This document shows positions 26,650-27,035 of a stretch of 45,919 nucleotides of DNA, piece after piece; positions within the stretch are counted from its first letter, which is position 1; every line of letters begins with the position of its first letter. Location of the stretch: positions 58,856,214 through 58,902,132 of the forward strand of contig NC_068993.1 of the NCBI RefSeq assembly GCF_001194135.2, written 5' to 3'. A program made the translations under genes and the position numbers. This DNA is from Octopus bimaculoides. Taxonomy: Eukaryota. The notes under the pieces are model-generated. The model saw nothing but the letters and a program-made list of their open reading frames with translations, was not told the origin of the DNA and ran no database searches.

Positions 26650-27035
26650 TAAAGTAAAGGTTAGAGGCAATACTTGATAATTGTAAGCACCTGTGTATGC
26701 CAGCTCGTGGTTGAGGTGAAAGAATAGATTGACACTACACACGGAATCGTGGCAAGGTATGGACGGTTCTCAGAGGACCGAAGAAATTATGTGCAAATGG
26801 AGAATTATACGAGGTATAGTACTATACAAAATACCGAAAGGATCTTCACCTCTTATATCACACCTTTCTTCCTCCTTTAACGCCGATGTGATATAATTTC
26901 CTGGGAGAGAAATACTCTTGCGGCTGAAGATAGCTTTGTATTGTAAATTATGCACTGATATAAAGCTTGAAACACGTGTACCGCAGAATCCTTTGTATTT
27001 TTGTTGTTACTTTTTGGATTTACAATTTATATATA
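26650..27035 (+). mobile_element. Possible Penelope-like/retrozyme fragment hosting the 26918 hammerhead
   Basis: CpG-retaining non-simple block between (TA)n tracts, with the hammerhead followed by a T-rich tail. No ORF recognised. Confidence 0.35.
26918..26986 (+). ncRNA. Minimal type I hammerhead ribozyme candidate (Penelope/retrozyme type)
   Basis: Stem I TTGCGG(26918-23)/CCGCAG(26981-86); core CTGAAGA(26924-30); 10-bp stem II AGCTTTGTAT(26932-41)/ATATAAAGCT(26958-67); GAAA(26969-72); palindromic stem III ACACGTGT(26972-79); GTA triplet with predicted cut after 26980. Confidence 0.78.

What the first reader, a model, noticed from the sequence alone, without database searches (positions are those of the whole stretch)
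26918..26986. Apparently intact hammerhead ribozyme, sense to the FAT pre-mRNA, inside the intron
Seen: every element of a type I hammerhead in the right order. These are a 6-bp stem I, CUGAAGA, a 10-bp stem II extended by a 4-bp hairpin (TGTA/TGCA) with a 3-nt bulge, GAAA, an AC/GU stem III and a GUA cleavage triplet. Stem III is the perfect palindrome ACACGUGU. Known: minimal hammerheads with short palindromic stem III occur in Penelope-like elements and retrozymes and can cleave as dimers, and a few amniote genes carry conserved intronic hammerheads. One oddity is a U-U pair (26931/26968) at the base of stem II, which may lower activity. Inference: it could cut the nascent FAT transcript about 9.3 kb after the giant exon.
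Basis: partly seen in the sequence, partly recalled or inferred. Interest (0 to 1): 0.85.

Follow-up and report, generated by a model that had tools for sequence, protein, structure and literature searches.

The report
Retroelement-borne hammerhead ribozyme motif in intron
The flagged 69 bases are a genuine hammerhead-ribozyme motif, but one of at least three scattered through this window on short non-coding mobile-element copies, so it is most likely a retrotransposon remnant, not a device controlling the cadherin gene.

Summary

It is not chance. A descriptor scan found two more type I hammerheads, at 9304-9368(-) and 41215-41287(-). 719 permuted decoy cores gave no hit.

All three have a short palindromic helix III and a 34-40 nt helix II insert. 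RNAcofold folds each homodimer into the classic double hammerhead. No Rfam hammerhead model detects any of them, even at E<=10.

The two minus-strand copies sit in homologous, AT-rich, non-coding elements of about 0.45-0.53 kb. These have inverted end fragments and a shared 3' motif, and they abut (TA)n. One locus holds a partial extra copy that starts within 2 nt of the predicted cleavage site.

No reverse transcriptase or endonuclease ORF lies in the window.

The best reading is the known Penelope-like-element/retrozyme class of metazoan hammerheads. These cleave poorly as monomers.

The motif is sense-oriented, 9.26 kb into the intron after the cadherin exon. Cutting of the host transcript is unsupported and probably minor. 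Conservation and activity could not be tested. It is a new member of a known kind, of modest interest.

The parts
26918..26986 (+). Hammerhead motif HHR1 (the finding). It comprises stem I 26918-23/26981-86; core CUGAAGA 26924-30; U·U 26931/26968; helix II 26932-67; GAAA 26969-72; palindromic helix III ACACGUGU 26972-79; and H17 = A26980, with the predicted cut after 26980.
26908..27002 (+). Extended type I fold. The closing stem AGAAAUAC 26908-15 / GUAUUUUU 26995-27002 lies beyond an internal loop ('loop 1') of stem I.
   Evidence: RNAfold of 26900-27006; coordinates checked
26648..27027 (+). Putative host element of HHR1. It is 380 bp of non-coding sequence, unique within the window, GC 0.38, bounded by (TA)n-type microsatellites at 26620-26647 and 27028-27048. 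Its boundaries are inferred, not shown.
27049..27548 (.). Assembly gap (500 N) starting 62 nt after HHR1. It hides whatever follows, including a possible tandem copy.
9304..9368 (-). Hammerhead motif HHR2: CUACG | CUGACGA | U-CCUG...CAGG-U | GAAA | palindrome ACCAUGGU | A17 | CGUAG. It has the same U·U and the same 8-nt palindrome layout as HHR1.
9052..9580 (-). Element of 529 bp carrying HHR2. It has inverted arms of 110-120 bp at 98% identity (9052-9164 and 9469-9580). The 3' end reads ...ATGCTAGACCACTGGT...TACCCTC and is followed by an assembly gap.
41215..41287 (-). Hammerhead motif HHR3: UGGUUA | CUGAAGA | GAAUUU...GAAUUC (G10.1-C11.1) | GAAA | palindrome ACCUAUAGGU | C17 | UCACCG. Stem I has one U·C mismatch.
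40998..41556 (-). Composite locus carrying HHR3. It holds an inverted 30-nt 3'-end fragment (41556-41527). Next comes an internally deleted mini-copy (41526-41453) that starts within 2 nt of the predicted cleavage site and ends TACCCTT(TA)5. The full unit follows (about 41452-40998), ending ...ATGCTAGGCCACTGGT...TACCCTTT(TA)n.
14311..17661 (+). Giant internal exon of a FAT-like cadherin, with nine or more cadherin repeats. It has a CAG acceptor upstream and a GTAAGT donor at 17662. This sets the host gene's strand and the start of the intron.

Best explanation
The flagged sequence is a real hammerhead-type (type I) self-cleaving motif. It belongs to the known class carried by metazoan retroelements: the 'minimal' hammerheads of Penelope-like elements (PLEs) and the hammerheads of non-LTR retrozymes.

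How it works (inferred from the family):
- The element is transcribed.
- Helix III is only 2 bp as a monomer, but it is an 8-nt palindrome.
- Two copies, tandem in one RNA or on two RNAs, pair through it and swap stem I strands, forming a double hammerhead.
- Each active site cuts after H17, here A26980, leaving 2',3'-cyclic phosphate and 5'-OH ends.
- These ends define the unit-length RNA that a PLE-type reverse transcriptase copies back into the genome, preferentially at (TA)n microsatellites.

The copy in the cadherin intron is most likely a solitary, non-autonomous or truncated insertion that is carried along in the pre-mRNA. As a monomer it should cleave slowly.

A rough estimate uses the axolotl analogue with the same U·U and helix III, which cleaves 22% per hour, or about 0.004 per min. 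That would cut a few per cent at most during an intron lifetime of about 10 minutes. No regulatory effect on the host gene is therefore expected.

Shown here: the motif, its statistical reality, the family of three, the dimer fold, and the element context of the two other copies. Inferred: cleavage, the retrotransposition route, the class of element hosting HHR1, and the low impact on the host gene.
For: 1. The motif is complete and correctly ordered.
2. It is not chance. There are three independent loci with the true core and none with 719 decoy cores. Markov and decoy expectations are 0.007-0.06 per window.
3. The three share family traits the descriptor did not demand. HHR1 and HHR2 have U·U at the base of helix II. 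All three have a 34-40 nt helix II insert containing GUAAAUU and perfect 8-10 nt palindromes.
4. The minimum-energy homodimers are double hammerheads for all three. A heterodimer of HHR1 and HHR2 does not interact.
5. HHR2 and HHR3 lie in homologous non-coding elements. Their post-cleavage halves align at z about 5. A shared 16-mer is found only in their four arms. Both have a common ...TACCCTY end next to (TA)n or a gap, and inverted end fragments.
6. At the HHR3 locus a partial copy begins within 2 nt of the predicted cleavage site. This is expected if cDNA synthesis ran to the 5' end of a self-cleaved RNA.
7. Literature supports the match. PLE and retrozyme hammerheads are type I, with a short palindromic helix III, a larger helix II and an extra nucleotide after A9. 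They are hugely abundant, mostly solo and low in activity (PMC4209133). U·U plus a 2-bp helix III with tetraloop is a known active variant (PMC7229834). PLEs make tandem and inverted insertions and prefer microsatellites (PMC8557442).
Against: - No Rfam hammerhead model scores any of the three, even at E<=10 on about 90-nt slices.
- HHR1 shares no primary sequence with the HHR2/HHR3 elements, has no inverted arms and has no second copy in the window. Its element class therefore rests on analogy.
- No RT, GIY-YIG or transposase domain occurs in any of 144 ORFs of 60 aa or more.
- The 380-nt putative element is not unusually self-paired (z = +1.0), unlike retrozyme circRNAs.
- G10.1-C11.1, described as highly conserved in PLE min-HHRs, is replaced by U·U and then A-U.
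- No genome-wide copies, orthologues or RNA data could be obtained. Covariation, conservation and activity are therefore untested.
Confidence: 0.75

Rival explanations
1. This is an active retrozyme-like locus. A second, tandem copy of the HHR1 unit lies in the 500-N gap. Intron transcripts would then form the double hammerhead in cis, release a unit-length RNA of about 0.4 kb that may be circularised, and in doing so sever a fraction of the cadherin pre-mRNAs.
For: - The gap starts 62 nt after the motif, right after (TA)n.
- Two of the three hammerhead elements lie within 62 nt of an assembly gap.
- The HHR3 locus is a partial tandem whose junction also carries (TA)n.
- Metazoan retrozymes are tandem repeats of 170-400 bp with low GC (PMC7229834). 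The putative unit is 380 bp with GC 0.38.
- The dimer fold is strongly favoured.
Against: - Gaps in this draft are frequent, 15 in 46 kb, and most sit at microsatellites, so the gap needs no tandem repeat to explain it.
- Sequence after the gap shows no similarity to the unit.
- The unit RNA is not highly self-paired (z = +1.0).
- No other copy of the unit occurs in the window.
Confidence: 0.15
2. This is a host-exapted intronic ribozyme that regulates cadherin pre-mRNA processing, by co-transcriptional cleavage or alternative isoforms. The model would be the conserved amniote intronic hammerheads in RECK, CTCL and DTNB.
For: - It is in sense orientation, 9.26 kb into a long intron.
- The core, stems and palindrome are intact.
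- Domestication of retroelement hammerheads in introns has a precedent (PMC6155905).
Against: - It is one of three similar motifs in the window, and the other two are antisense.
- There is no hit to Rfam HH9/HH10 or any other hammerhead model.
- It has a weak 2-bp helix III, a U·U at 10.1/11.1 and no evident loop 1/loop 2 contact. This predicts slow monomer cleavage.
- No conservation data could be obtained.
Confidence: 0.05
3. The motif is a chance look-alike in AT-rich, palindrome-rich intronic DNA and has no RNA-level meaning.
For: - There is no covariance-model support.
- Folding is only modestly better than shuffles (z = -1.5).
- A single loose hit has a probability of about 1-3% per window. 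That is not negligible if many windows were read.
Against: - Three independent loci carry the true core, against none in 719 decoy cores on the same sequence.
- The loci share quirks the descriptor did not require.
- Two of the three lie in homologous elements.
- A partial copy starts at the predicted cleavage site.
Confidence: 0.03

Closest known systems
Minimal hammerheads of Penelope-like elements (Cervera & de la Peña 2014, PMC4209133; Lünse et al. 2017, which could not be read here)
   Same: - Type I topology.
- Very short helix III whose 15.2-16.2 pair and loop are palindromic, so a dimer (double hammerhead) is expected.
- Helix II longer than canonical.
- An extra nucleotide after A9.
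- Poorly defined loop 1.
- Mostly solo, highly diverse copies scattered through the genome on both strands.
- Neighbouring inverted or tandem partial copies and microsatellite targets, as described for PLE insertions (PMC8557442).
   Different: - No RT/GIY-YIG ORF or pseudo-LTR pair occurs in the window.
- HHR1 and HHR2 have U·U where G10.1-C11.1 is reported as highly conserved.
- Helix II carries a much larger insert of 34-40 nt.
- Helix III has 2-3 bp plus a tetraloop, rather than none or 1 bp.
Type I hammerheads of metazoan non-LTR retrozymes, especially axolotl HHR_Amex2 (Cervera & de la Peña 2020, PMC7229834)
   Same: [quoted passage not shown]
- U·U mismatch at the base of helix II.
- Weak as a monomer (22% in 1 h) and efficient as a dimer.
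- Host elements are non-coding, low in GC and a few hundred bp long.
- Partial tandem arrangement at the HHR3 locus.
   Different: - No tandem array is seen for HHR1.
- Helix II is not the canonical 4 bp plus loop 2.
- No recognisable loop 1/loop 2 tertiary motif.
- The putative unit RNA is not highly self-paired.
- HHR2 and HHR3 have inverted terminal fragments, which are not described for retrozymes.
Conserved intronic hammerheads of amniotes (Rfam HH9/HH10; RECK, CTCL, DTNB; PMC6155905)
   Same: It is a type I hammerhead in sense orientation inside an intron of a protein-coding gene. These ribozymes are thought to derive from retroelement hammerheads.
   Different: - Those ribozymes are single-copy, conserved across species, have canonical helix lengths and tertiary loops, and are found by Rfam models.
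- This motif is one of several element-borne copies, is missed by every Rfam model, and has no conservation data.
Newt/salamander satellite and ASBVd hammerheads (double-hammerhead mechanism, Forster et al. 1988, as cited in PMC4209133 and PMC6155905)
   Same: An unstable helix III makes the monomer poor. Two copies extend helix III intermolecularly, exactly as the cofold predicts here.
   Different: Those occur in long tandem satellite arrays or in replicating circular RNAs. Here only dispersed single or 1.5-mer copies are seen.

Membership tests
Hammerhead ribozyme (structural class) | Conserved core C3-U4-G5-A6-N7-G8-A9 ... G12-A13-A14 ... A15.1-U16.1 and H17 (not G) | tested here: met
   CUGAAGA lies at 26924-30, GAAA at 26969-72, A26972-U26979 pair, and H17 = A26980. 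HHR2 and HHR3 have the same core.
Hammerhead ribozyme (structural class) | Three helices around the core in a permitted circular order (type I: stem I open) | tested here: met
   The descriptor scan finds type I hits only, and no type II or III. The stems are 6, 10+4 and 2 bp. The hammerhead-compatible monomer fold has -14.6 kcal/mol against an MFE of -16.1.
Hammerhead ribozyme (structural class) | G10.1-C11.1 pair closing helix II | tested here: not met
   HHR1 and HHR2 have U·U there, while HHR3 has G-C. U·U is documented in about 60,000 axolotl HHR_Amex2 copies that do self-cleave (PMC7229834). The failure weakens the case but does not exclude membership.
Hammerhead ribozyme (structural class) | Match to a curated covariance model (Rfam Hammerhead_1, _3, _II, HH9, HH10) | tested here: not met
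   There is no hit at gathering score on the whole window. There is none at E<=10 on slices of 86-191 nt around each of the three motifs.
Hammerhead ribozyme (structural class) | Site-specific Mg2+-dependent self-cleavage after H17 | not testable with these tools
   The only indirect hint is at the HHR3 locus, where a partial element copy begins within 2 nt of the predicted cleavage site.
Hammerhead ribozyme (structural class) | Loop 1/loop 2 tertiary contacts that give fast cleavage at physiological Mg2+ | tested here: inconclusive
   An internal loop in stem I exists. Helix II, however, is a continuous 10-bp stem with no loop at the canonical distance. A shared GUAAAUU in all three helix II inserts is unexplained.
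PLE minimal hammerhead (Cervera & de la Peña 2014) | Palindromic 15.2-16.2 pair and loop 3, so that two copies can form an extended helix III | tested here: met
   The perfect palindromes are ACACGUGU, ACCAUGGU and ACCUAUAGGU. The cofold MFE of each homodimer is the double hammerhead.
PLE minimal hammerhead (Cervera & de la Peña 2014) | Extra nucleotide between A9 and 10.1, and an enlarged helix II | tested here: met
   HHR1 and HHR2 have a U after CUGANGA, but HHR3 does not. Helix II has 10, 4 and 6 proximal bp, with 34-40 nt between A9 and G12.
PLE minimal hammerhead (Cervera & de la Peña 2014) | Location in the pseudo-LTRs flanking an RT + GIY-YIG ORF | tested here: not met
   No RT, GIY-YIG or transposase Pfam domain occurs in 144 stop-to-stop ORFs of 60 aa or more or in ORFs near the motif. 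The paper notes that most genomic copies are solo, so this does not exclude a PLE origin.
PLE minimal hammerhead (Cervera & de la Peña 2014) | Consensus families within the genome, full of covariation | not testable with these tools
   The source genome and its relatives are absent from every searchable collection. Only three copies are available, and their stems all differ. That difference is imposed by the search descriptor.
Metazoan non-LTR retrozyme (Cervera & de la Peña 2020) | Type I hammerhead inside non-coding, low-GC tandem repeats of about 170-400 bp | tested here: inconclusive
   The putative units measure 380 bp (HHR1), about 417 bp (HHR2) and about 455 bp (HHR3), with GC 0.33-0.38. 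Only HHR3 shows a partial tandem. HHR1 is followed by a gap.
Metazoan non-LTR retrozyme (Cervera & de la Peña 2020) | Unit RNA highly self-paired and expressed as linear or circular RNA | tested here: not met
   The MFE z-score is +1.0 for 26648-27027 and -1.2 for the inner part of the HHR2 element. Expression is not testable.
Amniote-type conserved intronic hammerhead (HH9/HH10) | Single-copy motif conserved at an orthologous intron position across species | not testable with these tools
   The closest available homologues of the exon are at most 47% identical, and no orthologous intron could be fetched. The motif is not single-copy in kind, as three occur in the window.

The most novel reading that the evidence does not exclude
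This genome carries a very abundant family of hammerhead-bearing, non-autonomous retroelements of about 0.4-0.5 kb that Rfam cannot see. Three motifs in 41 kb, if typical, would mean on the order of 10^4-10^5 copies per Gb-scale genome.

The hammerheads have an unusually large helix II with a conserved GUAAAUU element, and they cleave in vivo. The evidence for in vivo cleavage is a genomic copy whose 5' end maps to the cleavage site.

Sense-oriented intronic copies such as HHR1 would then impose a low but real level of pre-mRNA cutting or circRNA release on host genes.
Probability: 0.3. Interest if true: 0.5.

Novelty: new member of a known kind. Interest (0 to 1): 0.3.

Why it matters
If the reading is right, the finding is ordinary in kind. 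Retroelement hammerheads are known to be widespread in invertebrate and lower-vertebrate genomes.

It still has some practical value:
- Curated covariance models miss all three motifs here. Rfam-based annotation may therefore badly undercount ribozyme-bearing elements in this lineage.
- The HHR3 locus offers a sequence-only hint that such weak 'minimal' hammerheads do cut in vivo, which is still debated for PLE hammerheads.
- Sense intronic copies give a natural test of whether slow ribozymes affect host transcripts.

It does not currently support a new gene-regulatory mechanism for the cadherin gene.

Tried and rejected
- Rfam at gathering and at E<=10 gave no hammerhead hit for any motif, only noise such as snoRNA, miRNA and lncRNA models at 9-16 bits.
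- Whole-window repeat finder was swamped by N runs and microsatellites. BLAST self-comparisons replaced it.
- There is no second copy of the HHR1 unit in the window, no inverted arms around it, and no similarity to the sequence after the gap.
- The flanks of HHR1 and HHR2 show no alignable similarity. MAFFT cannot even put the three motifs in register. For that reason no covariance model was built, and any covariation count would have been circular.
- No coding partner was found. Ten ORFs near the motifs and 144 ORFs window-wide have no RT, endonuclease or transposase domain.
- Related sequence could not be retrieved. Exact-product look-ups of ORFs overlapping HHR1 and HHR2 found nothing. Homologues of the cadherin exon reach only 47% identity and none is from a close relative.
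- Scans of metagenome contigs for an HHR1 20-mer and for the window's abundant SINE found nothing. A scan of genome contigs for the SINE also found nothing.
- Literature searches linking hammerheads to octopods or cephalopods returned only a count of 235 Rfam Hammerhead_1 hits in the giant squid and general statements on PLEs. Lünse et al. 2017 is not held.
- A plain DNA-transposon (MITE) reading of the HHR2/HHR3 elements was considered because of their inverted ends. It was rated less likely than inverted partial retroelement copies for three reasons: the arms are copies of the element's own 3' end, they differ greatly in length (110 against 30 nt), and the HHR3 locus is a 1.5-mer with a junction at the cleavage site. 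It is not excluded.

Full report
**Observation.** The sequence at 26918-26986 (+) reads UUGCGG | CUGAAGA | U | AGCUUUGUAU-UGUA-AAUUA-UGCA-CUG-AUAUAAAGCU | U | GAAA | C-ACGU-G-U | A | CCGCAG.
- a 6-bp stem I, whose outermost pair is a U·G wobble;
- the CUGANGA box;
- a 10-bp helix II with a 4-bp extension and a 3-nt bulge, also predicted by RNAfold;
- GAAA;
- the 8-nt palindrome ACACGUGU, which as a monomer gives a 2-bp helix III with an ACGU loop;
- a GUA triplet that places the cut after A26980;
- U26931·U26968 at the base of helix II.

Beyond stem I, an internal loop and a further 8-bp closing stem (26908-15 / 26995-27002) are predicted. The layout is therefore that of a type I hammerhead with a 'loop 1'.

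**Is it more than chance?** On its own the motif is only moderately improbable.
- A loose type I descriptor gives 0.03-0.06 hits per window in Markov-simulated sequence. It gives 0.01 for stems as good as these.
- It gives 0.039 hits per descriptor when the two core boxes are replaced by 719 permuted decoys and run on the real window.

The same unbiased scan returned a second hit at 9304-9368 on the minus strand. A scan tolerating one stem I mismatch returned a third at 41215-41287 on the minus strand. That descriptor asks for at least 5 of 6 stem I pairs, at least 4 helix II pairs and a perfect 6-10 nt palindrome at helix III. With it the true hammerhead core gives three independent loci and the 719 decoys give none. 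All decoy 'double hits' in the looser scan were one locus counted twice. No type II or type III hammerhead is present.

**Shared traits.** The three motifs share features the descriptor did not ask for.
- HHR1 and HHR2 have the identical U...U flanking of helix II and A at position 17.
- All three have 34-40 nt between A9 and G12.
- All three helix II inserts contain GUAAAUU. Random triples of window segments share any 6-mer only 1.3% of the time.

The motif is real, and it is a member of a dispersed family.

**Covariance models.** No Rfam hammerhead family (Hammerhead_1, _3, _II, HH9, HH10) reaches gathering score in the window. None appears even at E<=10 when only 86-191 nt around each motif is searched.

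I give it limited weight for two reasons. HHR3 has a canonical G10.1-C11.1 pair and a 3-bp helix III, and it fails as well. The literature also states that PLE-type variants escaped canonical descriptors (PMC4209133). The likely cause is the very long helix II insert together with the minimal helix III. I could not test that directly.

**Fold and dimer.** As monomers the hammerhead-compatible folds are near the minimum free energy (-14.6 against -16.1 kcal/mol for HHR1), but helix III contributes nothing. For two copies, RNAcofold's minimum-energy structure is exactly the double hammerhead. It has an intermolecular 8-10 bp helix III with swapped stem I strands.

| Motif | Homodimer (kcal/mol) | Two monomers (kcal/mol) |
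|---|---|---|
| HHR1 | -45.1 | 2 x -16.1 |
| HHR2 | -37.0 | 2 x -13.3 |
| HHR3 | -37.2 | 2 x -12.1 |

A heterodimer of HHR1 and HHR2 shows no interaction.

**Context of the other two copies.**
- HHR2 lies in the middle of a 529-bp element (9052-9580) whose ends are inverted copies of 110-120 bp at 98% identity.
- HHR3 lies in a locus (40998-41556) with 30-33 nt inverted ends.
- The halves downstream of the predicted cleavage sites are homologous between the two elements. The alignment score is 130.5 against 91 +/- 7.8 for shuffles.
- They share the 16-mer ATGCTAGRCCACTGGT, which occurs in the window only in their four arms.
- Both end ...TACCCTY, followed by (TA)n for HHR3 or by an assembly gap whose far side is (TA)n for HHR2.
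- The inverted arms are therefore copies of the element's own 3' end, of very different length in the two loci.

The HHR3 locus is a 1.5-mer. Upstream of the full unit lies a mini-copy (41526-41453). It begins within 2 nt of the predicted cleavage site (41221|41220), carries a 150-nt internal deletion, and ends TACCCTT(TA)5. An inverted 30-nt end fragment precedes it, with 3-5 nt of microhomology at the junction.

This is what target-primed reverse transcription would leave if it ran to the 5' end of a self-cleaved RNA and then switched template. A breakpoint this close to the cleavage site has roughly a 1% chance under uniform truncation. It is a single post-hoc observation, so I treat it as a hint.

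Tandem and inverted partial copies and a microsatellite target preference are described for Penelope-like elements (PMC8557442).

**Context of HHR1 itself.**
- It lies in 380 bp of sequence unique within the window (26648-27027), between a (TA)n-type tract that ends a SINE copy and another (TA)n. A 500-N gap follows 62 nt after the motif.
- It has no inverted arms, no second copy in the window and no alignable similarity to the HHR2/HHR3 elements.
- Its RNA is not unusually structured (z = +1.0).
- No reverse transcriptase, GIY-YIG or transposase domain is found near it or anywhere in the window.

Assigning HHR1 to a retroelement therefore rests on analogy with its two neighbours and with the literature. 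It does not rest on its own flanks.

**Host gene.** The 1153-codon ORF is a cadherin-repeat exon. Its homologues are FAT-like cadherins of other invertebrates, at no more than 47% identity. It has a polypyrimidine-CAG acceptor at about 14310 and an AATG|GTAAGT donor at 17661/17662. No further exon is detectable in the window. HHR2 and HHR3 are antisense to the gene. The source organism could not be verified.

**Comparison with known systems.** The closest matches are two overlapping known classes.
- *PLE 'minimal' hammerheads.* They are type I, with a larger helix II, an extra nucleotide after A9, a palindromic 15.2-16.2 pair and loop 3, mostly solo and very diverse copies, and very low activity even as dimers (PMC4209133).
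- *Type I hammerheads of metazoan non-LTR retrozymes.* The axolotl HHR_Amex2 family has about 60,000 copies. [quoted passage not shown] It cleaves 22% in one hour as a monomer and far better as a dimer (PMC7229834).

Differences from both classes are the very large helix II insert, the absence of a coding PLE body or clear tandem array here, and the lack of strong self-pairing.

The amniote intronic hammerheads (PMC6155905) share only the intronic, sense location.

**Mechanism and consequence (inference).** The motif's role is in the element's own life cycle: dimer-dependent self-cleavage that trims element transcripts to unit length. For the solitary intronic copy, I take the Amex2 monomer rate (about 0.004 per min) as an optimistic proxy and a few to ten minutes of intron lifetime. 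On that basis at most a few per cent of pre-mRNAs would be cut. Less is expected at physiological Mg2+ without loop-loop contacts. A hidden tandem copy in the gap would raise this, and I rate that rival at 0.15. A domesticated regulatory role has no support (0.05), and chance is effectively excluded (0.03).

**Verdict.**
It is a real hammerhead motif of the PLE/retrozyme kind that probably needs a dimer. It is probably not a regulator of the cadherin transcript.
- It is a new member of a known kind.
- Interest is 0.3. The main points of value are that curated models miss all three copies, and that one neighbouring locus carries a possible genomic footprint of in vivo cleavage.

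Noticed in passing
window 9304-9368 (-), element 9052-9580: A second complete type I hammerhead motif with the same U·U and the same 8-nt palindrome layout (ACCAUGGU). It lies at the centre of a 529-bp non-coding element whose ends are inverted copies of 110-120 bp at 98% identity. An assembly gap starts 6 nt beyond its 3' end.
   Followed up: yes
window 41215-41287 (-), locus 40998-41556: A third hammerhead motif, with G10.1-C11.1, the 10-nt palindrome ACCUAUAGGU and C17. 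Its element is homologous to the one at 9052-9580. The shared 16-mer ATGCTAGRCCACTGGT and the ...TACCCTY end lie next to (TA)n.
   Followed up: yes
window 41453-41556 (-): An internally deleted mini-copy of the HHR3 element. Its 5' end maps within 2 nt of the predicted ribozyme cleavage site (41221|41220). An inverted 30-nt fragment of the element's 3' end precedes it, with 3-5 nt of junction microhomology. This is a possible genomic footprint of in vivo self-cleavage followed by template switching.
   Followed up: partly
helix II inserts: 26943-26949 (+), 9336-9330 (-), 41263-41257 (-): All three hammerheads carry the heptamer GUAAAUU in the distal part of helix II, although they have no other alignable similarity. 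Random triples of window segments share any 6-mer only 1.3% of the time. Its meaning is unknown: common ancestry, a tertiary contact or a protein site.
   Followed up: partly
window 26437-26647 (+); copies at 23558-23768, 8506-8716, 11710-11890, 30890-31065 (all -) and 43557-43740 (+): A tRNA-derived SINE-like repeat of about 190 bp is present six times at 68-92% identity, usually flanked by (TA)n. A different tRNA-like SINE head lies at 26341-26436, with copies at 19689-19784, 19928-20014 and 22567-22657.
   Followed up: partly
window 14311-17661 (+): A 3.35-kb internal exon encodes nine or more cadherin repeats of a FAT-like cadherin, with clear acceptor and donor sites. The best homologues in a 5.8-billion-protein collection are only 45-47% identical (annelid, gastropod, bivalve, insect). 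No close relative of the source genome is in the searchable collections.
   Followed up: partly
whole window (15 N runs, e.g. 27049-27548, 8717-9046): This is a draft assembly with 4.9 kb of N in 15 gaps, most of them flanked by (TA)n or (CA)n microsatellites. Two of the three hammerhead elements lie within 62 nt of a gap. Only about 4.5% of positions are that close to a gap.
   Followed up: no
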